DNA of 64,000 bases from Geosiphon pyriformis uo1. Its lineage: Eukaryota; Fungi; Glomeromycota. A program made the position numbers and the translations under genes. Shown piece after piece: positions 465 to 63,348 of the stretch. The stretch spans positions 1,424,847 through 1,488,846 of the forward strand of contig JAAOMT010000436.1 of the NCBI GenBank assembly GCA_016748015.1. Reading direction: 5' to 3'. A model generated the notes under the pieces. It saw only the letters and a list, made by a program, of their open reading frames with translations, did not search any database and was not told the origin of the DNA. Every line of letters begins with the position of its first letter. Positions within the stretch are counted from its first letter, which is position 1.

Positions 465-1800
465 GCAGGCTATTTTTCGAATAATGTCTTATATTATGTT
501 TATATTTGAAAACTTTTTTATAATAACAAAATTATTAGCAAATATAACAGTAATAATAAGTATATACATCTTAAATTGGCCTTATTTTAACTTATTAGCA
601 TTTTTAAAATTAAATTTTCAATAATTTTTATTAGCTTAAGTGTAAAAAAAATTTAAATTTGTATTTAAAAGATTATTTAAACCAATAAAAACATAAATAA
701 CACAATAATTAATATTAAAAAATTTATATACTTTTAAAAATTTTTTATTAGCTATTACATTAATAGAATTCAACAATACAAAAACAAAATCAATTGTCTT
801 TTTAACATTTTTAAAGTTTTTTAAATAGAAATTTTAGCAAATAAACTACTAATTAAAAAATTAATTAAACTAAAATTCAAATATTTCTTAAAATTAGTAT
901 TGTATTTAACACTATTTTTATTAAAATAATTTTTTAAAACAATAAAAGTACTATTATTAAATGCTTTAATTATAAAAAAATTAACAATAAGTGCCTAATT
1001 TAAATATTTTTTTAAAAATATACTTATATATAAATTTATTACAAAAACTAACTATTTGTTTTTAAACAATAAATAAATTATAAGAAATTTACTAAGAATC
1101 TTTAAGATTTTTAAAATATAATTAGCCAATTATTTATTTATAATTAATATAATATTAGTATACAAATATTTCAAATTTAAATCAAAAATAAACACTTATA
1201 TATTAATAAACTTATTTATAATCTAAGACTTAATATTAAAATATTATTTAAACAAAAAAACTTAAACTTGTCTAAAATAGTTTTTATTAAACTTTTTAAG
1301 ATTATTATATTGGCTTTTAAGTTATCAATTTTGATAGTTAGAATCTTTAATTTGCTAAAAAAAATTCCAAAACACATTAATAATATTGAACAATATACAA
1401 AAATTTGGCAATAGCTTAATAATAATCATATTAAGTTCTGATTTAATAATTAACATAAATGTCTTTTTGACATATATTAATAATATTAGAAAACAAAAAA
1501 TGTTTAGTTTGTAAGAAATTTTAACAATATAATCTGACAAAAATTTTAGAAAATGTTTCAAAATATTTTGATAAAAGACCAAAATCAAAGTTACAGAACT
1601 ATTAGTAAAAGTATTAAGTAAAAATTTTATTAAAAAAACACTAATAAACAATATAAACAGAAAACTTTTCAAAATACTACTTACCACAAAAACCTAAATT
1701 ATACAACTAAAAAAGACCAGATAAAGTCTGTTTTTTTGCATAAATACATATAAGATGTTTTCTATTAGATTTAAAAAAAATTTTTAAATACTAATTAGAT
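465..1800 (-). mobile_element. Fossil, heavily AT-eroded LINE fragment (ORF1 C-terminus and start of endonuclease)
   Basis: Minus-strand translation LKHFLKFLSDYIVKISYKLN matches LINE ORF1 SLELLTDQVSGILCKLS, and ILTIKIDNLKANIIILKSLIKTILDKF matches ILTTKVGSLKSKLVALEASVDSVLTKL. tagattataaataagttt matches tggattatgaataagttt (WIMNKF) of ORF2. Boundaries are approximate. Confidence 0.65.
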
Positions 1801-3985
1801 AATTTTAAATTTGGTTTACAAATACTAAAAATATAATTGTATTTTTTATATTTAATATACTTTAAAGTTAATAATTCAATTCAAACCAGATTAATATCTT
1901 TAAAAATTAGAATTAAATAAATAATAGTATTTTTAATAACAATAAAATTAAAACACATAATAGTATAATATGCTTATGTATATAAAACAAAGTTGTATAA
2001 AATACAACATATTTTTTCATTATATAATAAAACCAAATTTAAGAAATTATAAACAATAATGTTCATTAATAATATATATAAGAAAACATAATAACAGTTT
2101 TTTAAATCTTATATTTGTTTGTTTTTATTGGCTTTAGTTATATATATTGAGTTTTTGTTAAGCAAAATTAACTATTTAAAGAAGACCAAATTAGCAATTT
2201 TAGAACTTTTAAATTCAATAAGTGTTTTTTGTTACAGACCAATTGACTATATTTTAATTATTTTAATATTGCCAAATTTAAATAGTATTAATTTTAATAG
2301 TAATTTAAACAGATTAATTAAGATTTCTTTAATAATAAATTTTTAATCTAATTTAATATTAATTTTTTTTAAATTAAAGTTTATCCGAATTTTTTTACAA
2401 ACAGCCAGTCTTTTTATTGTTTTTAAATTAGTCTTAGATATAAAAATAAATTTAATAATATTTTGAAATTTTTAAAAAAATTAATACTTTTTCAAAACTA
2501 TTGATTTTGTAAAAAATTTTTTAATATATTTTAATTTATTATTTAAAGTTTTGTTAAGCACTATTATAAAATTAATATTTAAAGCAAAAAATTTAACTAA
2601 GTTAAAACATTTTCTTTTTTTTATTCATATATTAAAATATAAAATTGATTTAAAAGTTAAAAATAGTAAAAAATTAAAAACTTTTTTATTATTTAATAAA
2701 TCAAAAAACAACTTTTTAAGTGGTTTTTCTAAATTGTAAGTGCAAATGTTTTTTAGTGTAATTTTATTTATATATTTATTATTATTAAAACTATTAAAAT
2801 TTATAAAGTTTGTTTTTTTTATTAATATGTTTTTTAAATTATTTATATTAAATAAACTATTAATACTGTCTTTTTTATTCTTTATCTTATTATCTTAAAA
2901 ATAATACTTGATTATTTTATTAATTTTTAATATATTTATAACCAGAAATTTAGCCAAAAAATCTATTATATTAAACTTAACTATAGATTTTTTTGACTAT
3001 TGGCTAAAAATTTTTAAAATATAAATATATATATCTTGGTTTTTTATATTAAAATAGTTTTTTACTTTAGTCTTATCAGAATTTACAAAGCCAGTTAAAC
3101 TATTAGTAAGCTTTATTATTATAAATAAATTTATATCAAAAAAATAGGTAAGAATACAAATAGATAAAAAAATAAAAAAAATTTCTCTATAATCTAAGTA
3201 GTTTTATTATGAACAAAAAATTAACAAAACAAAAAATTATGAATTTTTTTTTAAATTTTTTAAGATTAAATATAATATTATTAATAAATAAATAAAATAA
3301 TTAAAAATAATTGTATATTAATTATATATAAATAATATATTTTTTTAAAAATTTTTTTTTTGAATATAATATAGTTTAGTTTTTATATATAATATATTTA
3401 ATTTATAATTAATTTAAACTTATTTGTTATATTATATTAAATTATAATTGAATTTTATATATTAATTAATAAAAAAAATTTTTGTTATTAGTTTTAACAG
3501 ATTTTACAAAATAAAAATTATAAAATAAGAATAATATTTATAAAATAACAATAAAATAAATAAATATAAAAACATATTTTTAAAAAAAATATTTAAATTA
3601 AATAAAAACAATTAATTTATTAAATATTAAATATATATATATAAATAATAAAAAATATATTAATTATAAAAAATTATTAAATTAATCTACTTTTTTTGCT
3701 AAATTAATTTACTCTTAATATGTAATATTATTTATATTATAATTTTATATTTAATTATATATAAGAATATATTAATAAATTTATAATCAAAAAGCTTTAG
3801 AATAAACTTAATAAGTTTTTTTTTTAATTTTACAAATAATTATTTTTTTATTTATTTATTTATTTATTTATTAATAAGTGCAGTCTAACCAAAGTCTAGA
3901 ATAAGTTACAAAGAAAAGTAGCCAACTAAACATGGTTTATGCATTTGCTACATGTGACCGGCCACTCGAACCAATCAAGGCAATA

Positions 3986-6900
3986 CTACGCACTTACCAA
4001 AACACTAACCCTATGAACTGCACCAGACAAAAACAAGAACCTACTCTTAAAACCAAAACCAACATCAAGAAAATCTAGCACACCAATAAGGCAGACCATG
4101 CCAGCTGAGAGAGGCGGAGCATCCACACCAAGAGCACTGGCCACAACAACATCATCACCAATCAAACCACTTCTCTCCATGTTAGATCTGAACTTAGTTC
4201 TAAAGAGCCAGAGGTTTGTCCTATAACTCTCAGCCAAATGACGGACAAAATCCATCACCACAATGGCCACTTTCTTCTTGTCACCGAGAGAAGCAGTGGC
4301 CTCATCCATCCAACTCTTAAGAACAAATCTCTTGCAAAAAACCAAATACAACCTAATATCAGAGACCCCCAGAGAGAGATCTCGCAGTACAAAAGATGGC
4401 AACAGTAGATTAGGACCCATTAGAGTCCTCCACAAACCACCAAAATTACCCAAAATATCTGACTGCACAGAAGCATCCTTAACACAAGTAAAACCATGAT
4501 CAGGGAGTTCCACATCACCACAAAACAGACAAGACACACCAGGGTAATTCTTATTATACAACCTCTTTCGAACAGCTACAGGCAACCTAAAATAAACAGC
4601 TTTTATGAAGTACATACAAAGAGCAGCAGTGGCTCGACACGTACTCTCAGAGAGCATATGAGAGTCAGGGTGCCAAACTAGAGTGGTACTATTCCAATCA
4701 ACAACCAGACCAAACAAACAAGACACAACCCCTTGGCCAGGACCCACCTCCCATTGAAACTTACAAATAGAATGAAAAATGTCACATACAAAATGACGGG
4801 CATTACCAAAAACTAGCCTGTCATCAGCAACCACATATCTACAATTAATCCTGGCAGGGAGAGAGATCCCAGAATGCACAGCCTGTTCAGTAAGAACGTT
4901 GAATTTAATCAAATTAACCACATGGCACCTTTCTATCCAGCAACTATTGCAACAATCCAGCTGTAACAGACCCAATTCAGCCACACATGCATCAATAGCC
5001 ACTTGACTATCCGTGTGCAAAGCCACTGAAACAGAGGCAGAAACGCACTCCAGAGCCAGGGCAATAGCCTTTAATTCAGCCAGGGTCAAAGACAACACAC
5101 CATGTACCTCCACTCCTAAATCTTTGTTCAAGCCAGGAAAATAAATGGCAGCACCACATGCCACCTGAAACATACCCAAACTTCTAAGAGAACTGTCAGT
5201 ATAAACATCAATCTCATCAGCCCACAATCCATGAATCTCCTCACGAATGTCAGCAAAAGATGTCGAATCCAAAACACTAGCACAGACAGAAGCTAAACTC
5301 GCAGGAGGGGAAGCATGCAAACAATTACTCAAATAAGCAGAGGCCTTCAAAAACCATAAAAACACAGGACCTCTAGAACCAAGTCTTTTCCATCGGCAAA
5401 ACATACACCAACTAACAATAAAACCATTTTTGTCCAGAAGTTGGTCACCATATGCCACACCAGCAATTTTTAAGGAGTGAACCACATTGAAATACAAAGG
5501 ATGACCCAATACTAATGACATTGAGAAATGGCCAGGAGAGCGAAAGGCACAGGAAAGCCTGTTATCCAAAGACAGCTTGTTGTTAAGAAATGTACGAACC
5601 ACACCCGCTAGAAAATTGTTTGAAGTGTTCACTCTTAGCTTAACAAGATATTGCAGAGGATTCAACAGAGCCCAGCACAAAACCTGCAAATCTATAATTC
5701 AATGTTCGAACAGTCAGCCAAAAATTCCAGAAGAATTCACAAACTGCACAATGGAAGCTGTCTTGCATTCAGCTTGCAACTGTTCAAAAGATTTCAGCCC
5801 ATAAAGAGAGGAGTGGTGCAACACCTCATTGGGAAAGTCTCTCGGCAAATTGGCTTTTGACCTAAGACCCCTTCTAATTAGAACGTCCCATTTTAGACAA
5901 ACAGCTTTGGAAACAAAACTAAACTGCATTCGATAACTGACTATGGGTTGCAAAACAGCTGAAACCAGATAAGAGAATTGTTTATTAGAGACAGCCTTCT
6001 GGAAAACCATATTTGAGAAGAACTTAATATCTGAATTGGCTTTGGCAAGACTCAGCTTAGACAAACCATTGGTGGACAAAAAAATATCCAAATATTGATA
6101 ACTCACACCAGGATTGGCAACAGTGATAGCCTGGCCATTGATGAGAACCCCCATTCTTTTGTTGATAGGAATGGCAACCGTCTTCTCGTTGTTTATGTTA
6201 ATGTCATTGATGAAGAAAAACTCGCTGGCCATATTAAAAATGTGCTGCATAGAGGCTTGCCCATTTTCCACCCAAATAGTGTCATCAACAAAGACACCAG
6301 CCGCAAAAAAAGAGGTCATACTCCCACTAGTCTCAATCCTTCCAGTCTTCGACACAAAGTTCAAATTGATCCAATAACCACACAAATGATCTTGTCTCAT
6401 AACTTCACATAACAAAGAGTCATAAAAAATTTTCCATAGAAGAGGTGAGAAAACTTCACCCTGATCCAAACCATCAAGAACTTTGTATCCATCAGAAAGG
6501 CCAAAATCTGTCATGATTCTGTTGAAGCGACTGTTGTAAATGTTGCCAAAAAACTTGATAAACTTATTGCACATTTTGATATGGCATAAACTAGCTTCTA
6601 AATAAGGCCAACCAACAGAGTCATATGCTTTGCGCATGTCTTGAAAAACTAGCCAAAGTTCGTGGTCTTTTTCCAAAGCATCCTCCACAATTAAATCCAC
6701 AGCTGAGATTAGTAACTGAGTGGAAGTGCCTTTGAGGACAGAAAAGTTGTTACCATGGAGGACATCAAACCTATTACAAGCAAAAGAGATCCTGTCTGAG
6801 AGAACTTTTGACAGAATTTTCCTGGCTGTCTCAATCAATACAATAGGTCATGTATTCGACAAGATGCCATCCCAATTATAAGGCTTAGGAATTATGGACA

Positions 6901-8597
6901 CCCAGGCCTCTTTTCAATGGACTGGAACATTACCAAAATGCAAACAAGAGTTCAGCAAAGACAACAAACACTCCAAAACCAAACAGCCAGTGTGTTTCCA
7001 AAGTTCATTGATGATACCAGACAAACCAGCAGCTTTGTTATCAGGAAGATTGCTTATAACTGAAGACATCTCACACATGGTAATATTACACATAACCAGA
7101 CTGAAGACACTATCATTAACATAAGCCAAAGGGGCATATTGTTGTGCCCAGAGACCAGACAAGGCAGGAAGAGCATTCTGCTTCCTGGTCCAATTAACCA
7201 TGATGTCATTAACTTTGAGCTTCACTTTATCAGGTTTCAAAATAAGAGAATCACCAACAACCAAATGGTCCAAAATGACTTTGCGAAAGGGCTGCTCCAA
7301 GATGCTCTAAATCATTCCACCTTTGTCCGTTTCAAACTTTTCCATATGCTTATCAATTGCATCTCTGATAGCAGATCTTTTGGCCACCTCAGATTCACAA
7401 TATTTGGACTTTCTATATTGCTTCCTAACCTTTGAAAGATGACTTATCAAGCCAGCAGAACCCACACCATTCCCGACCATACCAAAAACTTTGGAAGCTT
7501 CAGAAGAGTCAACCTTAAACCAAGTGTTAGCCAGATGATTAAAGCTCAAAGTATCACCCCCATCTTAGCACTTTCAATAACTTGGCAACCAAAAGCTCCA
7601 ACCTGGAAAATTTAGAAGAGAGTCTATTCTTAGCACAATCAAATTCACTATACCAATGTCTTGAAAAATTTTTTTCAGCAGAAGCAATCATGGTGTCAGC
7701 TAGCATCCCCCACATTCCATCCAAGTTGCCATCATCCTCAGCTATTTTGAACCTATCCAGAGAACCCAAAAGCACACACTCAGAAAGGTTCTTAAAATGT
7801 GCCCACTTTTTTTCATCAGCATCCTTAATCTTAAACTTCCAGCAATCTTTATTAGCATGCTTGTGGATGCTGTTCAAACGAGCATCCAGAAGACCACCCA
7901 ATCCAATAGACATCGATACAGCCAAGTGATCCGTGTTGAAAAATTCCAAGACAAAACCAACACCATGATCCACAACTGCTGAAATCAAAGAGTCACTAAC
8001 TAGAATGTAATCCAAAACCTTGCTAACATCTCTTGAATTGTTCTAAGTAGGAATCTTAGCTAGAGAGTGACCACCAAAAACATTAACTAAACCCAAACCT
8101 AAACATTTCTTAAGACTTGCCCCCTTGACTGAATTGTCTTTATTGAAGTCCCCACCCAAAACAACAAAAGAACTCTTGTTGACAGTATCAGCAATGAATG
8201 AATTAATAACAGAAGCCTGAGCAAAACAGTCACCACCAGACACACAGACATAAAGTCCAATGACAGACACAGAAAGCTTGTTTTTGAACAAAAGGCAAAT
8301 TGAAAAAACCCTGCCCTTCACCTCCTCGACTTTGGAAACATGACGAGCCAGAGTGTCATTCACAAAAATAGCCACACCAGCCCCATGAAACCCAACATCC
8401 AAACCAGACGTAAAAACCTAGACACCCTCAAACCTTTTCATGATTCATGGTTGTGAACTGAAACACAACTTGGTTTCTGTAACAATCGAGATCGAACTAC
8501 CAGATTCCTTATGCCAGCAATAAATGTCCTCTTGCTTTGCAGGATTGTTCATTCCCCTAACATTACACATGGCAATTTTCCAAATAAAACTGGTCAT
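3986..8597 (-). pseudogene. LINE ORF2: APE endonuclease - reverse transcriptase - RNase H - C-terminal CCHC finger; several premature stops
   Basis: APE motifs CNVRG, ETKL, GVAI, GGDFN, DYILVS, TDH. RT motifs QDMRKAYDSV, GLDQGEVFSPLL, FVDDT, YLDI. RNase H motifs YTDSSL, AELKAI, HTDSQ. CCHC finger CLFCGDVELPDHGFTC. The stops I checked derive from TGG/CGA/CAG codons. Confidence 0.92.
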
Positions 8598-10455
8598 TGT
8601 GATGAAGAAATAACCAAAAAACCCAAGCCAGCACATAACTGATCCAACTTAGCCAAAATCGAACTAACGGAGATGTCGAGAGCAACCAGCTTCGATTCCA
8701 GACCACCAACTTTGGAAGTCAGGACTTTGGAACTACTCAGACCCAATAGTAAACTGGTAACACCTGGAGAGAAAGAAGTAGGTTAGACAAAAGGATCATC
8801 AACCACCATGTTAAAATCTATGTTGGAGTTTGCAACCACAAGAGGAACAGAGGTTGGGGACTGAAGAACTACCACAGAAGGAGCCAATTGAGAAGAAGAC
8901 ACCAAGAGTGCCGAACTAATATTGTCAAGACAAAAAAGAATGTCGAAATTTGTTCAGACAGAAGCTCTACAGAGTGTTCCAGAAGCGCTAAGCGAGCACT
9001 TAAAAGAAAATTGACCACAGGTAGAGGGAGGAGTACCCCACCCAAACTCAAATCACTGGAAGGCAAAGAACTGAAACCAGAACCAGCACAAAAACCATGA
9101 GAGACTGAAGCAACTGAGACCACTTAAGCCCAAGATTTGCCACCAAAGGCAACAGAATGAGAGATCGGCACATTCTTCTTCACATACAATTTGGCCAGCT
9201 GGAGACGAGTATCAGAGTTGGTAGGCCTTATAAAAAACTTTGAAGATTTGAAAGCTGACGCAACTTCAGCATCACATTTCAAGGCAGAATAACCAAACTT
9301 CCCACACTGTTCACAGTAAACCAAATCCAGCCTAGCCCATGAGAATTTCACACCACCAAGAATTGGTTTTGTGCGAAAAGCTGACTCCAAAATCTCATCA
9401 GAATCAAAACACACAACAGCACAGCAGACCTTATTACCAGTCCCCAATAACCGATTTATGACACAAGTTTTTCTACCAGCCCCTTCAAGAAGATCCCCAA
9501 AATCATGAACAGTAGTCCCTACTGGCAAAGTAAACAAAAGTGCCTTGAACTGGTCCTTAGATGTCCAAGTTTCACAATCGCCCACTGCCATAGTCACACA
9601 AACTGAGTCTTTACCAATCAGGAAGGACCACCTAGCAGCCAAAGACACAGCCTGTTCCAATTCGGCGAATTCCACCACAGTCTTTTGCCATAAACCAATC
9701 AACTGGATTTTGATTGACTTAATTTCTCTAAACTCAAATACTGCAGTGACAATCATTTCCTTTGGCGTGTCCATGGGAATTTCCTTGATTACTATGGTCT
9801 GATCTGAGCGTATTCCTTGTCTCTTAAGATTGTTGTTTACAATGATGTTATTTTCCCTGGCCAATGATATGGCCTTTTCCATGCTTTCTAATGAAATAAA
9901 CATTGATCAGATGATCCCTTCAAATTTTGAGGGAGTAGTGGCCCCCCCAAAACCATTGATTGTTGAAAACAATTTCCTGATAACCTGAGTCTTGGCCATA
10001 GCCGATTTTCCCTCCACAGCAGATAGATTGATGTCCAATGTGAACGATTTCTTTACAGCGACTTCCACCTGAGACTTAACAATTTTGGGGTCCATCCACA
10101 CCTTCTCCAAAGAGAAAAACAAATGGGAAGGAAGAGAAACTTCCACCTCATCATCTATGCCATAATCAATAGAGCCGATAGGGGAACTGATAGCTGCACC
10201 AGCATTGAAACGTTTCGCATTGGGTGTATTCATTTGGGAGTCAGAAGTGCTTTTACCATCAAAGGTTCTTCCATCCATATCCATGCTAGCAAATTGCTCA
10301 TCCTTACAAACAGACCCACCATCCTTGAGATTCTTATCTGCACTTGAATATTTAATAGTACTGAGAGACTTTCTGACTTTTTGGGTTGAACCTCCACCAA
10401 CTGAACCAGTGGTCGAGACTCTAACTGACCTTTTCTTAGCTCCAGGCCCACTCAT
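8594..10455 (-). pseudogene. LINE ORF1 (gag-like: RRM-like region, zinc knuckle, C-terminal coiled coil)
   Basis: ORF pieces 9907-10455, 9124-9903 and 8869-9123; knuckle CEQCGKFGYSALKC; homologous to ORF1 at 12325 and 45386; stop overlaps the ORF2 start (ATGA). Confidence 0.85.
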
Positions 10456-12324
10456 AGTGGTAGCCAGTTCAACAACAAAGGGGTTTGTTTCTTAGAAAAT
10501 AGTGGAAGACAGTATGCAAAACAGAAAAAAGCTTCTTTTAAAATTTAACTCTTTTTCAGGAATTTGGGACGAAGGAGAGAAAGAAGTCACTATAATGTAA
10601 ATCCAAATAATTATATTTTTTATAAATTTACAAATTATATTCATACAATATTATTATTTTTAAAAACATTATATAACTTTTTTGAAATAATAATATAAAA
10701 TTTTAATATTTTTATATATTTTCAAAAATATATAGTTACAAAATAATTATTTGTTGCTAATAGTACTTATATTATTTTCAAATATGATCAAAAAAATAAA
10801 TATAATGCTTTTAAAAGATTTGTATTAGAAAATCAACAATAAAAAACAATAATTCAATTAATAAACTGTTTTTTTACTATATATAAATAATTATTTAAAA
10901 CTAATGAATATTGGTATTTAATAATTTTTAATATTAAACATAATTATAAACTATCTGATAATATTATTGAATATTTTATTGCTTAATAACTTAAATCCAA
11001 ACAAAAAATATTAGTTTTATAAATATTAAGTATAAATATTATATTATTATTAAAAAAAGCACAAATTTAAAAACTTTCTTAACAATAACAATACTTTTTT
11101 TTAATAATATACATAATTATATATATTATTATTAACTATAATATATATATAGTTATATGAATTATTTTAATAAATAAAAAAATGATAAATAAATTAAAAT
11201 AGAAAAAAAATTGTTATTACTATTTATTTTTAAGTAAAAACCAGTTTTAATATAAGTTTTATAAAAAAAAATAATCAAATTTACATTTAAGATACACAAA
11301 ACAAATTAAAACCAGAAAAAAAACTATTTAATTAAAGCATAACCAGAATTTTTTCAAAAATGTGTGATGTTTAAAAGTTTATTTTGAAAGTAATAAAATA
11401 AAAAATTATAAAGAAGTTTATAAAAAAAATATAACTGAAATATTTAATTAATTAAAACATTATTGTTAAGACTAATTTTCAAAATATTTTTTATTATTTG
11501 ATTAATATTATAACAAAAACAAAAACAAATAATAAAACTAATAGCTAATTTAATAAAATAAAACATAATATAATATATTAATAATATGTGTTTAAAGACT
11601 AAAAAATAATAAAAAATTCGAAAACTAATAATAATTGCATAACATATTTTAAATATTAATAAAATATATTTAGAGTTTTAAAAAAAATATATATATATAT
11701 ATCTAAAATAATTAATTGCTTATTATAAAGCTATAAAAAAAAGTTGGTTTAATATAAAATTAATACTTTTTTTAATTTATAAAAAACTATATATATAGTT
11801 AAATTATATACTATATTAAAACTATTTTAAATATCTTAATTATTTATATATATTAAATTAATTAGTTTAATTATAAATTTATTTAACATATTATTTTTTC
11901 AAAAGCTAATAATTTAGATAATCAAATTTAAATAACTAAATTTAAAATTATAATTATATATTATTAATATTAATTATTATTATAATTAATATAATCAAAC
12001 ATATATTAATTAATTATATTTTTTAATAATTATTTTTGAATAATAATTACAAATTTGAAATATTAAACTATACAAATAAGAATATATAAAAATCTTAAAG
12101 TATAATAAAGCTTATTATTATTAGATTATATATATTAATCTTTAATTTTTATTAATATTTTTTAATTTGTCAAGATTTTTTTAATTTCAATTTAGTTATT
12201 TTAGTTATAAAACTTTTTTCTCTTTTACTTCCACAAACTCTCAAAAAGCGCTTTTCTGATAAAGAAGTTTTTTGTTTTTTCTTGTTAGTATTTCACAATT
12301 TCTCTTTCTAATAACCCCTTTTTT

Positions 12325-14194
12325 GTGGACCTGGAAGTTTCTTCTAGTAGCAATATGTCTAAAAAAAAGGCACCAAAGAGTGCTTTTCATGGTCCTGCTG
12401 GTGGTTTCTTCTCACAGAAGAAGAGAGTTGTGTTTGGAAATGTCAAACACTCAGATAATAAAAAAGATATTTCTCTGGATAGGTCTGAGCTTGGTGACAG
12501 TATGTTCTTTGATGTGGATAATGTGTCTGGTGACAAGAAAAGTACTAACATGACCAGCATTAATGTTGGGTTTCTTCTGGATTCAGCCACCAATACTCTT
12601 AAAGCCAAGTATATCAATACTAATGCCATTTTTGGTTCACCTCTTGGTTCTTCTAATTTTGTCATGGATGATGATAAAGATGTCTTTTTTCCTCCTTACC
12701 TTTCAATCTCTCTGGAAAAAAAATGGATTGACCCTAAAATTGTTAAAACTCAGGTTGAGGTGTCTGTTAAAAAAATCTTTTGCTCTTGATATCAATCTTA
12801 GTGCTGTAGAAGGAAATTCAACAATGGCAAAAACTCAGTTAATTAGAAAAATTTTTTCTTCAATCAATGGTTTTGGGGGGGGCCACTACTCCCTCAAAAT
12901 TTGAAGAGATCATCTGATCTATCTTCACTTCCGAAAAAAGCATAAATATGGCTGCATTTTTGGCCAGAGAAAGAGGAATTGTCATAAACACTAATCTCAA
13001 GAAATCAAGAGTGTGTTCAGATTGGGCCGTAGTAATCAAGGAAATTCCCATGAATATACCAAAGGAAATGATTGTTACTGCAGTTGCCAAATTTGGTAAT
13101 ATTAAATCAATTAAGATTCAGTTAATTGGTATGTGGCAGAAGACTGTAGTGGAATTTGCCAAATCAAGTCAAGCCGATCTGTTGGCATCAAGATGGTCAT
13201 TCCTAATTGGGAAAAACTCAGTGTATGTGGGAAAAGCTGTGGAAGATCATGATATCTGGGCATCAAGAGACCATTTTAGGGCACTTCTGTTTACTTTGCC
13301 AGTGGAAACAACTGCACATGATCTTGGTACTCTTTTGGATAGGGCTGGCAGTAAGACTTGTATTATCAATCAATCTTTGAACATTGGCAATAGGTTTCGT
13401 TGTGCTGTGGTTGGCTTTGAATCTGAGAAGGATTTGGATTCAGCATTTTGCATTAAGCCTGTTTTTGGTAGTATGTGGCTCTTATGGACTAGATTAGATT
13501 TGGTTTGGTATGGGAAGTGTGGGCATTTTGGGCATTTGGCTTTTAAGTGTGATGCTCCAGTTGGTTCTATGCTATTGTTATCTTTGGTTAAGTCTTTTAA
13601 AGGTTTTGTTTCTGAGGAGAGGCATTTCCAGCTGGCCAAGTTATATAAAAAAAAAGAGGTTCCTATCTTCCGTCCTATTGTTTTTGGTGGAAAATCCTGG
13701 GCCCAAGTGGTCTTAGTGGCTTCCCCCCTCTCTCGTGGTTTTCCTGCTGGTCCCAGCTCAAATCTTTTTTCTTCTTCTTATCATGACATTGGTGATGTTT
13801 CTTCTTTGAATGAACATTTGGCCTCTTTGGAATGCTTATTCAAGTTTCTTTCTAATTGGGTGTTCATTATTGTTAAATGTCTTAATAGTGCTGAACTGGT
13901 GTCTTTGGTGTCTTCTTCTTTTGTCTCTCCTCCTGATGCTTCTGTATCTTCAGCTTCAGATTCAGGCTTGGATATGGTTTTGGATGGCACTTCAATACTA
14001 TTGCTCACTTTTCTTCTACTGTTAATGTTGGTGTGCATGTTCTCAATTCTAGTAGCTCCAGAATTCTTACTGGCAAAATGGGTGGCTTGGAGTCTAAGTT
14101 GACATCTTTGGAGGCTTCTATTGGTTCAGTATTAGCATGTTTGGATGGCTTGTGCTCTAATTTGGGTGCTTCTTTGCATTTTTTCTCCAAATGA
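12325..14194 (+). pseudogene. LINE ORF1 (gag-like), frameshifted and with stops
   Basis: Fragments 12325-12789, 12563-12904 and 12948-14102 share SFALDINLSAVEG, AVVIKEIPM, a knuckle (YGKCGHFGHLAFKC) and FGGKSWAQV with the other copies. Confidence 0.85.
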
Positions 14195-17100
14195 ATGACC
14201 TAGTTTGGAAGTTCACCATGTGTAATGTTTGGGATTTCAATGTTTCCACCAAATGGGTGGACATTGTTCATTGGCATGTAAGCTCTGGGAGTATGGTTTT
14301 TTTTGTTATTGAGACAAAGTTGAGACCTTTTTCTGGACCATGGATCAAGAATGAATTTGAGGGGGTTCAGATTTTTACTTCTGGTTTGGATGTTAGTTAT
14401 CTCAGTGCTGGTGTTGCTGTGATCATGAACAATTCTTTGGCTTGCTATGTTTCTAAGATTAAGGTGGTCTCTGGTTGTGTTATCTTGGTGTGTCTTCTGT
14501 TCAAAGGCAAGCTTTCAGTGACTGTGCTCAGTTTGTATGCTGGTGCCTCTTCTGGCATTTGTTTTGGGCAGGCATTTGAGGTTAATTCTCTCATTGCTAA
14601 GGCTGTTAATACCAGCAATTTTGTTGTTTTGGGTGGGAATTTTAATGAAAATGGGTCTGGAAGGAGTGTAAGTTTCAGGTTTTGCCTGGGTCTTGGTCTG
14701 GTCAATTCGTTTGCCAGCCATTAATTGGCACTTGCTCCTATATGATGCAACTCGAGAGGGATCGAAAAGATTATTGATTATATTTTAGTTAGTAAAAGTC
14801 TGTTATCCACTGTTGCTAAGCATTGGGTCAGGTCAGTTTCGGATTTTTTTGATACGGATTATAGTGTTGTCATGGTGTTGGTTGGTATGGGTGGGCTTTT
14901 GGATGTTCAATTGAATAGCTTGTGCAGGCAGGCTAACAGAGATTATTGGAAGTTTAAGATTAAGGATGCGGATGTGTCCAAGTGGGATAAGTTTAAGAAT
15001 TGTGTTTTGGCAAGGCTTCTGTTGATCAAAGGCATCTTTGCTAATGCCAAAGCTGGTGGTAATTTAGATACTATGTGAGTGATTTTGAAAAAGGAGATGG
15101 TTGAATCTGCTGATAAGATTTTTTCCAGACTGTGGTTTAGCAAATTTCATTGCTCTAGGAACAAACATTCTTCGAAGTTTTTTGGGTTGGAGTTGCTTGT
15201 TGCAAAGATTCTTGGTGCAGTCTGCTCTGGCGACATGCTTGAAGTTGTCTATTTCATAAAAAAATGGTTCACTTTTGATGAAGACAAAGCTTGCACATTC
15301 TCTAATTTGGTTAGATTGGGTGAGGATAGTGGGGTTTTTCTTAAGCATCTGTCTTTATTTCGCAAGGAATACAGAAAATCAAAAATGTTTGAATCAAGGC
15401 TAACTAAAGAGGCTTCTGTTAGAAAAACTATAGAAAAATGCATGGAGAGTTTTACTTCTAATAAAGGGGGCATGATCAGAAGTATTTTGGACTGGCTTTT
15501 TCGCAAAGTGGTACTTAATTATTTGGTGGTTGATGGAGACTTGGTTCTGGAACCTGGGGAGATAAAGTCTAAAATGGATGAGATCATGACAGAATGGACA
15601 AGGAAGCAGGTATTGTCTGATCTTTGGGCTCGCCAATATGTGCCTTTGGATTATGTGTGGAATGATGCTTTTTTTGAGATAATGTGTGAAATCAGTTTGG
15701 ATAAGCTGCTCTCAGTGGTTAATGATCTTCCTAATCGCAAGACTGTTGGCTTGTCTAGCATTTCTAATGAATTGTGAAAACATAGTGGTGATGTGGTATT
15801 GGGTTGCCTTCTGGAGCTGTTGAATACATGTGTAATTGTTGATGAGGTGCCTACTTTATGAAGGAGAGTGTGGGTGTCAATGATTTCAAAGCCTTATGAC
15901 TGGGATGGGGTTCTTACAAACACTCGGCCTATTGTATTAATTGAGACTGCCAGGAAGATTCTCTCTAAGATTTTCTCTGACAGAATTTCATCCACTTGCA
16001 GCAAGTTTGGTGTTCTTTGTGGTGATAATTTTTCTGTTTTAAAGAGTACATCTACACAGTCTCTGGTTTTTGCTGTTGGCTTAGTGGTTAAGGATGCTTT
16101 GGAAAAGAATTGTGAACTTTGGCTGGTATTAGAAGATATGTGTAAAGCATATGACTCAGTTGGGTGGCATTACTTGAAAGCAAGCTTGAAATGCATTAAG
16201 ATGTACAGCAAATTTATTAGTTTCTTCAAAGGCATATATAATGATAGAATTAATAGGGTCATAATAGATTTTGGTCTGTTGGATGGCTATCATATACATG
16301 ATAGTTTGGATCAAGGTAAGGTCTTCTCCCCCCTTCTTTGGAGGATCTTCTATGATCCACTCTTGTGTGAGGTTAAGAGGCATAAACATTTGTGTAGATA
16401 CAGGATTGATACTAATTTTGTGGTAAAAACTGGCAGAATTGAGAATAGTGGTGGAATGTCATCCTTTTTTGCTGCTGGTGCTTTTGTAGATGATATGATT
16501 TGGATGGGAGATTGCCAGGCTTTCATGCAGTATGCTCTTAATATTGCCAGTGAATTTTTTTCAATCAATAATATTTCTATTAACAATGAGAAAATGGTGG
16601 CTATTCCGATCAATCAGGATGTCAAAGTTGCTTCTTTGAGTATTAGTGGTCAGCTAATCTCTATAGCAAAAAAGAGCGAAGTTTACAGATACCTGGGAAT
16701 CTTTTTGTCAACTGAGGGGTTGTTCAAACCTAGTTTGGCCAAGGCACATTCAGATGTTTGTTTCTTTGTCAATGTTGTACTTAGGAAGACTATTACGGAC
16801 AAGCAGTATTCTTATTTGGTCTCTACTGTTTTGCAGCCAATTGTTAGCTACAAAATGCAGTTTAGTTTTGTTTCTTCTGGTGTATGTTGCAAGTGGGACA
16901 TTTTGGTTAGGAAAGGCCTCAGGTCTAAGGCATGCTTGTCTTGTGACTTCCTGAATGAGGCTTTGTATCATCCTTCTCTTTATGGCTTGAAGCCTTTTGA
17001 CCAGGTACAATCTGAGAGTAAGATGGCTGTAGTAATATCTTTTTCAAATGCTTTGGGCATTTTTGGTCAGTTGTTTTTTTATTGCTTCTTGGATTTGCAG

Positions 17101-18870
17101 GTTCTTGGGTAGACACCCTTGAATCCATTGCAGTTTCCAGTTAAGCTGCACATTAGTCCCGTAAACAATTTTTTAGCTGGTGTGGTCAGAATTTTTTTGG
17201 ATTGTGAGCTGTCTTTGGCAGGCTTTCTACCTAATGCATTTAGAGACCCTGGTAATTTTCCTATGCCTGAAATTTTGGGAAAATCCTTGTTTCTTAGTTG
17301 TGTTTGCTCTTTAAAGCATTTTGGAGTTGCTTTTGGTGACAGACTCCTTGACAAAAAAAGTGCTATAATGGATTGGAAGACTTTTCATCATTGAAAAAGG
17401 CTTGATCCCAGGGGCTCTGTGTTTCACTGGTTTAATGTTACATCGAGGTTTTTGCTGAATAAGAGTTCAGTGTCATCTGCTGCTGTTAAAGCTAATGGTT
17501 TTTCAGGCTATAGCATTTTGGATTCTGAACAGTTTGCTTTTGTGCATAATGATTTGCTCAAAGTTTGGTCTGGCTCTTTTGATGTTTATACTGATGGTTC
17601 ATTGAAATTTGCTGGCTTTTCCAGTATAATTAGCGGAGCCACTGCTTATTTTCTTGCTTTGGATTCTGGAGTTAGTATTGGCATTTATGGGCTTTTATCT
17701 TCAACTTTATTAGAATTGCAGGCTGTGGCTTTTGCTCTGGAATGTGTTCCTCTCTTCTGTACAGTGGTTTTGCATCTCGACAGCCAAGCTGCTATTGATG
17801 TATGTGTGTCTGAATTAGCTTTTGCTGTTCTTGATTTTTACAATTATTGTTGGATTGAGAGAAAATATATTGCCAATTTGATTAAGGATAAAGATCTCAC
17901 TGTAAGTTGAGTTAAGATCAAGGGTCATTCTGGGGTTCTTGGTAATAATAAAGCAGATATGCTGGCTGGTGAGGCTGCTGGCTTTCCTCTTTTTTTGCCG
18001 GCTGGAGTTCATGAGTGTTTTTTGGTGGTTGAAGGTACTGCAATTTCAGGTAATACTTGTCACTTTGTCAGAGATGTTTATAGATCTATTTGTCATGTTC
18101 ATTGGGAGACTGGTCCAGGTCATAATATGGTTCCAGTTGCTTTGTTGCAGAGTTTTGATTGGATTGCTTCCACACAGGTTTGGCATCTTGACTTGCACAT
18201 ACTTGCTGAGTTTACCAGCTGTAAGTCTGCAATTTTTTGCACATACTTGATGAAGGCTCTACACAGAAGGCTGCTGGTGGCTGTCTGCAAAAAGTTATAT
18301 GATAAAAGTTATTCTGGCGTGCAGTGTTTGTTGTGTGACAAGATAGAATTGCCAGACCACGTCTTCACTTGTTCACAGGATGTTTATATTCAGTGAAACA
18401 TTTTGTCGGAGATGTCTGCTTGCTGGATTTCTCTGGCTGGTGCTTGTGACCCATTTTCTTCCTCTGTCTTAAGGACTCTTGATCTTTGTCATTCAGATGT
18501 CAGCTTGTATTCAGTCATGTGTAAAGAGTTTGTGCTTAAGGATTGGTGTACAGAGATGGTTGGCATTTTTGGTGATGTTAAGAGTGCTATTAGTGTGGTA
18601 GTTGACTTTGTAAGGTATTTGGTCGAGTTGTATCAATTCAAGATGTGATTGACAAGGTCTAAATTTAGAGTGGATATAAAGAGGGCAGGCTTAGTTGGTG
18701 ATGATGGTTTGGTGGTGGGTCTTTTATGTTGTGGGTCTTTTATACTTTCAGATAGAGTGGTCAGATTGCTTGGTATTATAGAGTCTTTTGCTGTGAGTTT
18801 TGGCTGTTGTAGGTCTTGTCCTTTTTTTTCTGGTTTGGATGATAATCCATGTGTTGTTTTAGGTATGTAG
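14191..18870 (+). pseudogene. LINE ORF2: APE endonuclease - RT - RNase H - CCHC, with many premature stops
   Basis: Successive in-frame fragments from 14191 to 18870; motifs ETKL, GGNFN, TRPIVLIET, KAYDSV, FVDD, YLGIF, YTDGSL, LDSQ, KGHSG, CLLCDKIELPDHVFTC. Confidence 0.92.
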
Positions 18871-20509
18871 TGTTGCCTTGTTTGGCCCAAGTGACTGGCC
18901 ACATATAGAGAGTGCATAAATTGCACTTAGTTTGAACCACTTAGTTTGGTTCTATGTACTAGGTAGCAATTGGGCTTTACTTGTTAAATTGTTTAATAAA
19001 AAAAAAAATTTAGTTAAATAACTAAATTGTATTATATTTTTTTGTTATTATTAAACTAATTATTGATTTATTATTTTTTATTTGCTGATTGATTTTGTTA
19101 ATTAAATGTGATAATATAGACCTTTTTTTATGATTTTAATAATAATTTTTATAGTATATTGTTGTTATTTTTGTATTAAAAACCATAAAAATTTCTGGTA
19201 ATAGCATTAAAAATAATTTTAACAATATTATAATAAGAAAATTTTAAACAACATACAATTTTAAAAACTATTTATAATAAACATATTTTCAAAAAATAAA
19301 CTTAAATAATTCAGATTTTAATTATATCTTTTGTTATTAAGAATTTTTTAATCAAAAAATTTAAAAAAATTTTTTAAGTATTTTAAATTGCTTTTAATAA
19401 TAAAAATCATCTATTTAACAAAATTTATTTCAATTTAAAATTGTTAGAAATGTTTTTTTTTAAATTTAAATATGTAAATATAAAATTTATAAGAAACAAG
19501 ATCATAATATTCAGATCTGTTTACAATAAAGTATTTTTTAATTATAAAATACTATAAATACTTAAAACATAAAAAAAAATTAAATATATAATTTATATTT
19601 AATTTAATATAAAAAAAAATTATTTTTTATTTTAATTAAACTAATATTTATTAGATTTACTAATAAATAAATATTAAAATTCTATATATATTAATATTAC
19701 ATATTGTGAATAAATTAATTTAACAAAAAAGATGAATTAATTTAATTATTTTCTAATTATATTAATAAAATTTAATAATTATATATAATAATATATATTA
19801 TAATAGTTTTTTTTTAATTTTATAATTATAATTAAAATAAAAAGTAAAAAAAATTTAAATATTATTTTTTTTATAGTAATTTATAAAGTTTTAATAAAAA
19901 AAGTTATTTTATTATTAAAATAGTTAGATAAAATATTATTAAAAATTTTTTATTTTTTTTAATATTGTTAATATTATTTTGTTGTTAATTTTATTGTTAA
20001 TAAAAACTGATAAATTTCTAATAAGTTAATTTATTTTTTTAAAATATTTTTTTATATTTTAAACTATATCTATTATTAAACTTATAATAAAATAACTAAT
20101 TCTATATCAATTACTTATATAATTACTTTATAGTAAAAGTTAACTTTTTTACAAAAATATTTTATATGTAAGTTTATTAATAATATGTAATTATTTTATT
20201 ATAAAAGTTGAATTTTTTACAAAAAATCTTAATTATAAGCTATTTAATAATATATAAAAAAAGAAATAAAATAAAAATAAAAAAAATTGTCTTTATTTAG
20301 AATTAATTAAATAATTAAAAATTAGTAACTAATTAATTTTAAAATATTAGTTGTAATTATAAATTTTAAACAATTAATTTGTTATAACTAATTATTTGTT
20401 AAGAAAATAATTTTAAATTAAGATTTTAATTAATAATAAAAATTATAAAAATAATTTTATGTTAATTAATAACTCAAATTTTTATTGATAATAATGTTTT
20501 AATAATATT

Positions 20510-30136: not shown

Positions 30137-30504
30137 TTATTTTTAAAAAAATATGTAAAAAAATATAATGTTTTAATTAAAAAAATATAAAATTAAAAAC
30201 TAATTTACTATGTAATTTTTTTAATAAATCTATTTACTATTTTTTTTAATTAATATAAAACTTTTGAATAAATTTAAATTAAATCTAAAATTTTTATTAT
30301 TATGGTTTTTATTAATATTAATACTATTTTAAAATTACTTTTTATATATAAATTTTTAGACTTACAGATTTAAAATATATTTTTTTGAATTTTAATAGTT
30401 TTAAAGATTAATTTTTTTTGGAAAATATTGTTTAAATATATTTTTTAACATTAATACTCCTTTACAAAATTTGAAATCTGGATTTTTTTAAACATATTTA
30501 TGTT

Positions 30505-34090: not shown

Positions 34091-34103
34091 AACATATTTA
34101 TTA

Positions 34104-63347: not shown

Positions 63348-63348
63348 A

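What the first reader, a model, noticed from the sequence alone, without database searches (positions are those of the whole stretch)
10796..11045. RIP-like, all-context C>T/G>A erosion of repeats, shown by two copies of one MULE
Seen: 28141-28260 and 10796-10915 align without gaps. I count 29 differences in 120 nt; all are transitions, and 27 of them are C>T or G>A toward the 10.8-kb copy. They include CpG sites, but most are CpA, CpT or CpC. The same signature gives the TGG>TGA/TAG stops, the FVDD>FVNN and YLDD>YLDN catalytic losses, and the ATG>ATA start losses in TEs across the window, while CPA2 and YND1 keep abundant CpG. Established: RIP is an Ascomycota process, typically CpA-biased and RID-dependent, and ordinary mCpG decay should be CpG-restricted. 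Inference: a repeat-targeted, context-relaxed deamination process drives TEs to near-pure AT in what looks like an early-diverging fungus, where to my knowledge such a system is not characterised.
Basis: partly seen in the sequence, partly recalled or inferred. Interest (0 to 1): 0.8.

Follow-up and report, generated by a model that had tools for sequence, protein, structure and literature searches.

The report
Transposon-targeted C-to-T hypermutation in Geosiphon
In the mycorrhiza-related fungus Geosiphon pyriformis, some transposon copies have lost up to three quarters of their cytosines to almost pure C-to-T changes while equally old copies and ordinary genes are spared, which resembles the RIP genome defence of moulds in a fungal group where the papers I could search report no RIP signature.

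Summary
Window 28141-28260 and 10796-10915 align without gaps, with 29 differences: 27 C>T/G>A toward the 10.8-kb copy, 2 reverse transitions, no transversion.

Thirty of at least 42 genomic copies of this MULE show the same pattern:
- 18 copies lost 3-13% of their C/G sites, 7 lost 27-38%, and 5 lost 61-72%.
- Transversions (about 1% per site), reverse transitions and indels are equal in all three classes, so this is hypermutation and not age.
- Every context is hit: CpG 0.54, CpC 0.43, CpA and CpT 0.30. A 5' T or C is favoured.
- Both strands are hit equally, with no clustering.

The two LTRs of a retrotransposon in the window differ by 51 transitions and 1 transversion. Host genes keep their CpG, and unique non-coding DNA stays at 30-35% GC. 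A two-copy host-gene duplicate of the same transversion age has ts:tv 2.3.

No DNMT locus has the QT/ET motif VI of RID/Masc1, and no APOBEC-like or DddA-like deaminase was found. An orphan catalytic-only DNMT1-like gene exists. The process is therefore RIP-like in outcome but is not canonical RIP.

Other windows of this scan reported the same process on other DNA of this genome. I found no published report. I class it as a new variant of a known kind.

The parts
10642..11046 (+). Hypermutated MULE fragment (the finding's 10.8-kb copy, = L028). About 65% of its C/G sites were converted; GC is 0.11.
   Evidence: 98.8% purine/pyrimidine identity to L041 over 405 nt.
27864..30109 (+). Full-length MULE copy (the 28-kb copy). 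The left ~750 bp is nearly intact (2-7% of C/G lost). Loss rises smoothly to ~70% in the right half.
   Evidence: MULE transposase domain in the ORF at 28485-28838.
19197..19679 (+). Hypermutated right part of a short MULE copy, collinear with 3668-3849 and 10642-11046.
   Evidence: (RY-coded BLAST).
3668..3849 (+). Hypermutated left end of the same split MULE copy.
   Evidence: 94% RY identity to element positions 32-207.
601..3800 (.). AT-rich block (about 12% GC). Surviving cytosines are depleted in CpG and TpC and enriched in GpC/ApC.
19001..23200 (.). AT-rich block (9-14% GC) with the same survivor signature.
29201..30800 (.). AT-rich block: the hypermutated right half of the 28-kb MULE plus adjoining DNA.
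54007..54640 (.). One LTR of a ~9.4-kb LTR retrotransposon. It differs from its partner by 51 transitions and 1 transversion.
63367..64000 (.). The partner LTR. The polarised C>T/G>A changes split 20/20 between the two LTRs.
52208..52219 (+). LINE reverse-transcriptase catalytic motif reading FVNN instead of FVDD (two G>A changes).
57820..57831 (-). LTR-element reverse-transcriptase motif reading YLDN instead of YLDD.
23301..27271 (-). CPA2 (carbamoyl-phosphate synthase large chain), an unaffected host gene used as control. CpG o/e is 0.77-0.97 and GC3 is 0.27-0.37.
41928..44180 (-). YND1-like GDA1/CD39 nucleoside phosphatase, an unaffected host gene used as control. CpG o/e is 1.05.
12300..18900 (+). 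GC-normal LINE (39% GC, CpG o/e 0.10) lying inside hypermutated DNA; a later insertion.
3986..10455 (-). GC-normal LINE (41% GC, CpG o/e 0.26-0.31) lying between two pieces of the hypermutated MULE.

Best explanation
This is a transposon-directed cytosine-deamination hypermutation, comparable in outcome to a genome defence.

Shown:
- In Geosiphon pyriformis, selected integrated transposon copies have their cytosines converted to thymine on both strands of the duplex.
- All sequence contexts are hit. CpG and cytosines preceded by T or C go fastest; those preceded by A or G go slowest.
- The copy ends at about 10% GC, while its transversions, reverse transitions and indels stay at background level.
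- Equally old sister copies, host genes, unique non-coding DNA and a two-copy gene duplicate are spared.

Inferred:
- The agent is enzymatic and is aimed by the silenced-chromatin state of transposons rather than by homology alone.
- The most likely executor is a cytosine-5 DNA methyltransferase-family enzyme acting as methylase-plus-deaminase. This is how RID and DIM-2 are thought to act in ascomycete RIP.
- Candidates are the DNMT1-like genes and the orphan catalytic-only DNMT1-like protein KAG9301204.1.

The process works like the heterochromatin-dependent branch of RIP, but it is not canonical RID-type RIP.
For: Phenomenon:
- 30 MULE copies gave C>T 930 and G>A 810, against 13-66 for every other substitution class.
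- Loss classes are 3-13% (18 copies), 27-38% (7) and 61-72% (5). Median transversions per site are 0.008, 0.011 and 0.009. Spearman rho 0.24, p 0.19; no relation to indels or reverse transitions either.
- Mutated sites are independent between copies (observed/expected 1.0-1.4), except in copies that share flanks.
- In purine/pyrimidine coding the copies are 99-100% alike, with sharp ends at the TIRs.

Context:
- 3' context: CpG 0.54, CpC 0.43, CpA 0.30, CpT 0.30. 5' context: T 0.43, C 0.38, G 0.31, A 0.26.
- The surviving Cs of all AT-rich blocks in the window show the same signature: CpG o/e 0.09, TpC 0.64, GpC 2.06, ApC 1.19.

Duplex, not single strand:
- C>T roughly equals G>A in every copy (heterogeneity p 0.996 for the MULE family, 0.62 for the LTR family).
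- There are no strand runs and no spatial clustering.

Second family:
- The LTR pair differs by 51 ts and 1 tv. The 40 polarised C>T/G>A split 20/20.
- 30 LTR copies carry 345 private C>T/G>A against 54 tv, none at CpG.

Sparing of non-TE DNA:
- Genes have CpG o/e 0.8-1.05 and GC3 0.27-0.37. Unique non-coding DNA is 30-35% GC.
- The DNMT gene duplicate (1.15 kb, 90% identity, tv 1.9%) has ts:tv 2.3.
- Window GC is bimodal, with modes near 10% and 37%.

Element-limited cases and neighbourhood effect:
- L024 and L027 are hypermutated inside GC-normal flanks.
- Flank GC correlates with mutated fraction (rho -0.52, p 0.003).

Enzymes:
- About seven DNMT loci, including a catalytic-only DNMT1-like gene with no upstream BAH/RFD ORF.
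- No APOBEC_N, OTT_1508, NAD1 or DddA-like hits, and only five CDA-fold loci of the kind expected for housekeeping.
Against: - No enzyme is linked to the pattern by any experiment or correlation.
- No methylation data were available.
- The hits look like independent Bernoulli trials on both strands. A slow chronic process would give the same picture.
- The three loss classes rest on 30 copies, some of which are related.
- One copy (27864-30109) shows a continuous ramp from 2% to 70%, which argues against strictly quantised episodes.
- The control for 'not duplication-triggered' is a single gene pair, partly coding.
- Many GC-normal TE copies (LINEs, LTR elements) sit beside hypermutated DNA, so targeting is selective for reasons I cannot name.
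- The six-frame family searches have limited power for divergent, intron-split deaminases.
Confidence: 0.55

Rival explanations
1. Chronic passive decay. Some TE copies carry dense cytosine methylation in all contexts, and spontaneous deamination of 5mC, poorly repaired, slowly erodes them. There is no dedicated mutator and there are no episodes.
For: - Hits are independent, on both strands, unclustered and uniform along short copies.
- CpG is the fastest context.
- All TEs, including GC-normal ones, are CpG-depleted, so TE methylation exists.
- There is a smooth ramp next to a gene promoter.
- Mutated fraction correlates with the neighbourhood.
Against: - Non-CpG cytosines in heavily hit copies accumulated about 1.05 substitutions per site at 0.9% transversions.
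- That is about 7 times faster than CpG sites (0.14 per site) in sister copies of the same transversion age.
- It is also above the CpG-to-transversion ratio I recall for fully methylated mammalian CpG (own knowledge).
- Published AMF methylomes describe mCG on TEs (PMC8647823), not dense non-CG methylation.
- The loss values fall into narrow classes.
Confidence: 0.25
2. Canonical RIP: a homology-sensing, premeiotic process that mutates any duplicated DNA and is run by a RID/Masc1-type enzyme.
For: - Changes are transition-only, and both members of a pair are mutated (the LTRs split 20/20).
- Segmental copies that share flanks diverged by independent hits.
- GC is bimodal, and the classical RIP indices are positive in the AT-rich blocks.
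- The loss classes are compatible with doses of about 0.3 per round.
Against: - There is no CpA preference.
- Every motif VI seen in the DNMT loci reads ENV, not the QT/ET of RID/Masc1 (criterion as stated in PMC6572847).
- A linked 1.15-kb gene duplicate was not mutated.
- 18 of 30 copies of a family with at least 42 copies are untouched.
- Abundant LINE and LTR families remain GC-normal.
Confidence: 0.08
3. An AID/APOBEC-like or DddA-like nucleic-acid deaminase, possibly of bacterial origin, edits transposon DNA.
For: A 5' TpC/CpC preference, and depletion of TpC among surviving cytosines. DddA-type enzymes act on duplex DNA at TpC (own knowledge).
Against: - No hit to APOBEC_N, OTT_1508_deam, NAD1 or DddA-like. 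The MafB19-deam and PF00383 hits fall on the same four or five loci, of the kind expected for housekeeping.
- There are no strand-coordinated clusters.
- CpG is the top context regardless of the 5' base.
- The element is a DNA transposon, so there is no cDNA intermediate.
Confidence: 0.07
4. Ordinary neutral decay under a strong genome-wide AT mutation bias, with or without CpG-only methylation. The AT-rich copy is simply old.
For: - The genome is 29-31% GC.
- Even lightly mutated copies show a GC>AT excess that would predict a low equilibrium GC.
- MULEs insert into AT-rich DNA.
Against: - Transversions, reverse transitions and indels do not rise with C>T load.
- 22 of 27 changes in the pair, and about 80% family-wide, lie outside CpG.
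- Unique non-coding DNA holds at 30-35% GC and gene GC3 at about 0.3.
- Host paralogues show ts:tv of 2.3 and 0.7.
Confidence: 0.03
5. Artefact of sequencing, amplification damage or assembly.
For: None found. Raw reads could not be consulted.
Against: - Hypermutated copies sit at distinct loci with their own flanks and target-site duplications.
- The pattern is copy-specific and reaches 75% of cytosines.
- Neighbouring genes on the same contigs are normal.
Confidence: 0.01

Closest known systems
Repeat-induced point mutation (RIP) of Neurospora crassa and other Pezizomycotina
   Same: - G:C to A:T transitions only, on both strands.
- Up to most cytosines of a transposon copy are lost.
- Both members of a pair are hit.
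- It produces AT-rich blocks and a bimodal GC distribution.
- It creates stop codons and Asp-to-Asn losses in catalytic motifs.
   Different: - No CpA preference; the order here is CpG > CpC > CpA = CpT, with 5' T/C favoured.
- No RID/Masc1-type motif VI.
- A linked gene duplicate and most copies of the same family were not hit.
- The host is a glomeromycete, outside Dikarya.
- Timing in the life cycle is unknown.
DIM-2 / heterochromatin-dependent branch of RIP (Gladyshev and Kleckner; recalled from my own knowledge and cited in the review PMC13297926 as part of DIM-2 and RID biology)
   Same: A DNMT1-superfamily enzyme, guided by silent chromatin, is thought to convert C to T in repeats. The neighbourhood dependence and the ramp beside a promoter seen here fit chromatin guidance.
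   Different: I did not show a DIM-2 orthologue. The Geosiphon candidates are DNMT1-like genes whose N-terminal domains I could not read, plus an orphan catalytic-only DNMT. No H3K9me3 or 5mC data exist for this fungus.
RIP-like TpCpG hypermutation in Pucciniomycotina (Microbotryum and others; Horns et al. 2012, recalled from my own knowledge and not re-read)
   Same: Transition hypermutation of TEs outside Ascomycota, with CpG involved.
   Different: Here the 5' base of CpG does not matter (ACG 0.56, TCG 0.51, GCG 0.77), and about 80% of hits are outside CpG.
mCpG decay of methylated transposons, as in Rhizophagus irregularis (mCG on TEs, PMC8647823)
   Same: A CpG-depletion layer is present on all TEs in the window (CpG o/e 0.07-0.31), while genes keep CpG.
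   Different: CpG decay alone leaves GC near 40%, as in the LINEs here. The hypermutation removes cytosines in every context and takes copies to about 10% GC.

Membership tests
Canonical RIP (RID-dependent, Neurospora type) | Only G:C to A:T transitions, concentrated in repeated DNA | tested here: met
   1740 C>T/G>A against 396 of all other classes in 30 MULE copies; the LTR pair differs by 51 ts and 1 tv.
Canonical RIP (RID-dependent, Neurospora type) | Strong CpA (TpG) dinucleotide preference | tested here: not met
   CpA 0.30, CpT 0.30, CpC 0.43, CpG 0.54 in the intermediate class.
Canonical RIP (RID-dependent, Neurospora type) | RID/Masc1-type DNMT: catalytic domain only, with motif VI reading QT or ET instead of NV (criterion as stated in PMC6572847) | tested here: not met
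   every motif VI recovered reads ENV (C657, C666, C702, C646, C692). One catalytic-only DNMT exists (KAG9301204.1), but it also has ENV. No phylogeny against RID was possible.
Canonical RIP (RID-dependent, Neurospora type) | Any duplication of a few hundred bp or more at 80% identity or more is mutated, including non-TE DNA | tested here: not met
   a 1.15-kb host-gene duplicate 32 kb apart (90% identity) has ts:tv 2.3 with no AT-ward skew; 18 of 30 copies of a family with at least 42 copies are untouched. The gene-pair control is a single case.
Canonical RIP (RID-dependent, Neurospora type) | Both copies of a duplicated pair are mutated, at different sites | tested here: met
   polarised C>T/G>A changes split 20 and 20 between the two LTRs; segmental copies sharing flanks have mostly independent hits.
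Canonical RIP (RID-dependent, Neurospora type) | Acts in the premeiotic dikaryotic stage of a sexual cycle | not testable with these tools
   No life-stage or cross data. Reads could not be consulted.
CpG-methylation decay | Transitions confined to ancestral CpG | tested here: not met
   22 of 27 changes in the pair are non-CpG; 546 of 683 hits in the intermediate class are non-CpG; 345 private C>T/G>A changes in LTR copies, none at CpG.
AID/APOBEC-type or DddA-type deaminase editing | Strand-coordinated clusters of C>T (single-strand substrate) | tested here: not met
   runs tests have z between -2.8 and +1.9, mostly near 0; per-copy strand heterogeneity p = 0.996 and 0.62.
AID/APOBEC-type or DddA-type deaminase editing | A dedicated deaminase gene in the genome | tested here: inconclusive
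   no hits, but for three of these families the control genomes did not ring either; only five CDA-fold loci.
MULE (Mutator-like) DNA transposon | MULE transposase domain, terminal inverted repeats, 8-11 bp target-site duplication | tested here: met
   PF10551, E 1.5e-11 in the window ORF and in L041 ORFs; ends read GGGAATT ... AATTCCC; flanking 8-9 bp direct repeats in L011, L012 and L017.

The most novel reading that the evidence does not exclude
Glomeromycotina have their own genome defence that does not depend on RID. It is guided by chromatin and deaminates cytosines in all contexts. It is executed by a lineage-restricted catalytic-only DNMT1-like enzyme: KAG9301204.1 in Geosiphon, with relatives found only in Ambispora and Acaulospora. 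It acts in discrete episodes of about 30% cytosine loss. That would point to a germline-like or cryptic sexual stage in a lineage long regarded as asexual.
Probability: 0.2. Interest if true: 0.9.

Novelty: new variant of a known kind. Interest (0 to 1): 0.78.

Why it matters
RIP and its relatives are treated as a feature of Dikarya, mainly Ascomycota. Papers I read state that RIP signatures are absent from Gigaspora, Mucoromycotina and chytrids (PMC8647823, PMC6572847).

A transition-only, all-context, transposon-directed hypermutation in Geosiphon has four consequences:
- It extends irreversible mutational genome defence to the glomeromycetes.
- It does so without RID and with a different sequence signature, so it either arose independently or reveals an older DNMT-based mechanism.
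- It helps explain the genome's bimodal composition, with 64% repeats and blocks of 10% GC.
- It gives a concrete handle on two open questions in arbuscular mycorrhizal biology: how these fungi restrain transposons, and whether they pass through a special (sexual or germline-like) stage.

There is also a practical point. Annotation of this genome must allow for TGG>TGA/TAG, Asp>Asn and ATG>ATA changes in dead elements. Purine/pyrimidine-coded searches recover relics that ordinary searches miss.

Tried and rejected
No organism label, no read-level check of the assembly and no look at polymorphism among nuclei was possible.
The LINE family (2770 candidates) could not be fetched. The DNMT1-like loci could not be extended to look for BAH/RFD domains, and no random genome sample was taken.
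- A self-BLAST of the window with relaxed scoring drowned in spurious alignments between AT-rich blocks. Only the pairs at 78% identity or more were used.
- The LINE copies inside the window are 64-71% identical. They are separate lineages, so they were not used for a neutral spectrum.
- Old DNMT1-like paralogues (L032/L036) are saturated (ts 46, tv 67). They serve only as a sign of an ordinary spectrum.
- E-values of the RY-coded BLAST are inflated. Only hits of at least 150 nt and at least 88% identity were believed.
- Boundary analysis at element ends was uninformative, because MULEs insert into DNA that is already AT-rich.
- I could not place the orphan DNMT against RID, Masc1 or DIM-2, because no reference sequences for them were available from a tool. 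I did not type them from memory. The big word-index protein search was not spent on this.
- The Geosiphon genome paper (Curr Biol 2021) is not in the library, so I cannot exclude that it mentions the AT-rich compartment.

Method note. For polarising changes I used per-column majority states inside scripts: the MULE family and a 634-bp LTR. They were used for counting only.

Correction. An earlier count gave 11039-11046 for the 8-mer at the MULE break. The correct range is 11038-11045.
Full report
**1. The observation**

Window 28141-28260 and 10796-10915 align without gaps. There are 29 differences: 15 C>T, 12 G>A, 1 A>G and 1 T>C, reading from the 28-kb copy to the 10.8-kb copy, and no transversion. 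The ungapped match runs over 238 nt (10794-11031 / 28139-28376, family D15). Over that span, 52 of 56 differences are C>T/G>A. Shuffling one sequence gives about 163 mismatches, of which 27% are transitions, so chance is excluded. The element is a MULE: it has PF10551 in the ORF at 28485-28838 and its ends read GGGAATT...AATTCCC.

**2. The organism**

The window is G000:C669:1424847-1488846, in a 128.3-Mb assembly of 792 contigs. An exon of a G000 gene is 100% identical to KAG9301204.1 of Geosiphon pyriformis. The assembly statistics match those published for that species: 129 Mb, 795 scaffolds, 64% repeats, 29% GC (PMC9453076). Geosiphon is a glomeromycete of the order Archaeosporales.

**3. 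The family-wide test**

The 238-nt query finds at least 42 copies, and 30 were fetched. Most are 1.1-kb deletion derivatives of a 2.3-kb element. I compared each copy with the majority state of the 17 most GC-rich copies. Totals are C>T 930 and G>A 810, and every other class lies between 13 and 66.

The share of C/G sites converted falls into three groups:

| Group | Copies | C/G sites converted | Median transversions per site |
|---|---|---|---|
| Low | 18 | 3-13% | 0.008 |
| Intermediate | 7 | 27-38% | 0.011 |
| High (includes the window's 10.8-kb copy) | 5 | 61-72% | 0.009 |

Transversions, A/T-to-G/C transitions and indels do not differ between the groups. Spearman rho between C>T load and transversions is 0.24 (p 0.19). 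In purine/pyrimidine coding, all copies are 99-100% alike between sharp element ends. This is therefore hypermutation that is decoupled from age, not ordinary decay.

Hits are independent between copies (observed/expected shared sites 1.0-1.4). The exceptions are L020/L023 and L014/L025. With each other they share identical flanks, so they are segmental copies of one insertion.

**4. The signature**

In the intermediate group, the per-site hit rates are as follows:

| Context | Rate |
|---|---|
| CpG | 0.54 |
| CpC | 0.43 |
| CpA | 0.30 |
| CpT | 0.30 |
| 5' T | 0.43 |
| 5' C | 0.38 |
| 5' G | 0.31 |
| 5' A | 0.26 |

ACA and ACT are the most resistant trinucleotides (0.15-0.19). The surviving cytosines of all AT-rich blocks in the window, pooled (10.8 kb), independently show the same thing: CpG o/e 0.09, TpC 0.64, GpC 2.06, ApC 1.19.

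C>T and G>A are balanced in every copy (heterogeneity p 0.996). There are no strand runs and no spatial clustering of hit sites, and density is uniform along the short element. The substrate therefore behaves like duplex DNA hit many times independently.

**5. A second family and an internal clock**

54007-54640 and 63367-64000 are the two LTRs of one roughly 9.4-kb retrotransposon, whose ORFs include integrase and dUTPase domains. They differ at 52 sites: 51 transitions and 1 transversion. I polarised these against 28 other copies. 40 are C>T/G>A, split 20 and 20 between the LTRs. Across 30 copies of this LTR, private changes are 345 C>T/G>A, 64 reverse transitions and 54 transversions, with no CpG among the stable columns. 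Other repeat pairs in the window also show excess transitions: ts:tv is 65:10 for 31190-32160 and 336:53 for the tandem pair at 32161/34458.

**6. Controls in non-transposon DNA**

- CPA2 and YND1 ORFs have CpG o/e 0.77-1.05 and GC3 0.27-0.37. GC-normal TE ORFs have CpG o/e 0.07-0.31. A CpG-specific layer therefore marks all TEs, and genes are free of it.
- Unique non-coding DNA around the two genes is 30-35% GC and one intron-sized gap is 23%. That is far from the 10% of the hypermutated blocks. The window's 200-bp GC distribution is bimodal, with modes near 10% and 37%, and 17% of windows are at 16% GC or below. Gene neighbourhoods at eight other loci have a median of 34%.
- A host-gene duplicate serves as a same-age control. 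This is the orphan DNMT gene at C657:788 kb and its degenerate copy 32 kb away. They align over 1.15 kb at 90% identity, and their transversion distance (1.9%) matches that of the MULE copies. The pair has 50 transitions and 22 transversions, with no marked AT-ward skew. Older DNMT1-like paralogues give ts 46 and tv 67.

It also shows that duplication alone did not trigger the process, although it is one case and partly coding.

**7. Targeting**

Some hypermutated copies sit in GC-normal surroundings (L024, L027), so the effect can be limited to the element. Across the 30 copies, however, the mutated fraction falls as flank GC rises (rho -0.52, p 0.003), which indicates a neighbourhood effect.

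In the window's full-length copy (27864-30109), loss rises smoothly from 2-7% in the first 750 bp to about 70%. That first stretch abuts the CPA2 promoter. Two copies on other contigs show the same ramp with mostly independent sites.

GC-normal LINEs lie inside hypermutated DNA. Purine/pyrimidine-coded BLAST shows that 3668-3849, 10642-11046 and 19197-19679 are collinear pieces of one short MULE copy that was split by two insertions. At the second break the two pieces share 8 bp. These read ATTATATT (11038-11045) and ATAGCATT (19201-19208), against ATTGCACC in the 28-kb copy. They were mutated differently, so part of the hypermutation happened after that insertion, while the LINE at 12300-18900 arrived later still.

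**8. Candidate enzymes**

Six-frame searches of the genome find about seven C5-DNA-methyltransferase loci:
- DNMT1-like genes on C371, C702 and C666.
- Two DNMT2-like genes on C646 and C692.
- A compact gene at C657:788.2-789.6 kb with a degenerate paralogue at 820.7 kb.

The compact gene encodes KAG9301204.1 (540 aa). Motif I lies at its N-terminus and there is no upstream ORF for BAH or RFD domains. Its best solved relatives are DNMT1 catalytic domains (E 8e-31), ahead of bacterial enzymes (5e-23). In 1.84 billion cluster representatives, only two other proteins reach E 1e-30 or better. One is from Ambispora leptoticha (56% identity); a further relative is from Acaulospora colombiana (44%).

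Every motif VI recovered reads ENV, not the QT/ET that marks RID/Masc1 (criterion quoted in PMC6572847). There were no hits for APOBEC_N, OTT_1508_deam, NAD1 or DddA-like. For three of these families the control genomes were silent too, so that absence is weak evidence. Only five CDA-fold loci were found, of the kind expected for housekeeping.

**9. Interpretation**

What is shown is a transposon-directed, duplex, all-context C-to-T hypermutation. It acts independently of age and spares genes, unique DNA and one gene duplicate.

What is inferred is that it is enzymatic, aimed by the silent-chromatin state of transposons, and carried out by a DNMT-family enzyme, as in the DIM-2 or RID chemistry proposed for RIP. 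Three points support an active step:
- Non-CpG cytosines in heavily hit copies accumulated about 1.05 substitutions per site at 0.9% transversions.
- That is about 7 times faster than CpG sites in sister copies of equal age.
- The loss values fall into narrow classes.

The main rival is passive decay of densely non-CG-methylated copies. It fits the Bernoulli-like hit pattern and the ramp, and I cannot exclude it without a methylome. Canonical RIP fails three of its defining tests: CpA bias, RID, and action on any duplication. APOBEC-type editing lacks both the gene and the strand-clustered pattern. Ordinary decay and artefact are contradicted.

**10. Novelty**

[quoted passage not shown] Recent reviews assign RID and RIP to Ascomycota (PMC13297926 and PMC7862722). 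Full-text searches for Geosiphon with RIP, and for RIP-like with early-diverging fungi, found nothing relevant. The Geosiphon genome paper itself is not in the library.

Within this scan, the same process has already been reported many times on other DNA of this genome. Follow-up reports reached similar signatures: CpG plus 5' T/C, and domains rather than homology. My analysis was done independently on this window and agrees with them.

I class the finding as a new variant of a known kind. It is RIP-like in outcome, but it occurs outside Dikarya, without RID, and with its own context and targeting rules.

Noticed in passing
window 3668-3849, 10642-11046, 19197-19679; breaks at 3849/10642 and 11046/19197: These are collinear pieces of one hypermutated short MULE copy, split by two insertions that carry GC-normal LINEs (3986-10455 on the minus strand, 12300-18900 on the plus strand). 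At the second break the pieces share 8 bp, which read ATTATATT (11038-11045) and ATAGCATT (19201-19208) against ATTGCACC in the 28-kb copy. They were mutated differently, so part of the hypermutation is later than that insertion..
   Followed up: partly
window 27864-30109; L044:1746-3174; L045:1273-2727: A smooth ramp of cytosine loss runs along the full-length MULE, from 2-7% in the first ~750 bp to ~70%. It appears at the same element positions in three copies, with mostly independent sites. In the window the spared end abuts the CPA2 promoter..
   Followed up: partly
L031:1462-2807 (G000:C657:788241-789586) and L035 (G000:C657:820.7 kb): An orphan catalytic-only DNMT1-like gene (KAG9301204.1, 540 aa, motif VI ENV, spliced). 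It has a degenerate paralogue 32 kb away, in which motif VIII is altered. Named relatives exist only in Ambispora leptoticha and Acaulospora colombiana..
   Followed up: partly
MULE family alignment (loci L001-L030): TGG trinucleotides in hypermutated copies become TAG, TGA and TAA (few sites). Earlier notes on this genome read TGA-for-Trp transposons as a bacterial genetic code. G>A hypermutation should be excluded there, for instance by checking whether TAG and TAA also replace Trp.
   Followed up: no
window ORFs 3986-10455, 12948-17112, 58314-59867 versus 23301-27271 and 41928-44180: GC-normal transposons are strongly CpG-depleted (o/e 0.07-0.31), while host genes are not (0.77-1.05). A CpG-methylation layer therefore marks TEs separately from the all-context hypermutation..
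   Followed up: yes
L002-L030 flanks: MULE copies, intact ones included, sit in AT-rich targets (100-bp flanks 4-30% GC, about two thirds of them below 17%) with 8-9 bp direct repeats. New insertions therefore land preferentially in DNA that is already AT-rich..
   Followed up: partly
L014, L020, L023, L025: Four MULE copies share identical flanking sequence, so they are segmental copies of one insertion inside a larger repeat. Their cytosine loss differs (12% against 35-37%), with partly shared and partly independent hits..
   Followed up: partly
window 54007-64000: An LTR retrotransposon of about 9.4 kb on the minus strand. Its ORFs carry a dUTPase domain (58314-59252) and an integrase zinc-binding domain (56475-56966). 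Its reverse-transcriptase motif reads YLDN..
   Followed up: no
window 32161-34198 and 34458-36509: A tandem duplication with a 2.3-kb period at 80% identity. It differs by 336 transitions and 53 transversions, spread symmetrically over both copies..
   Followed up: no
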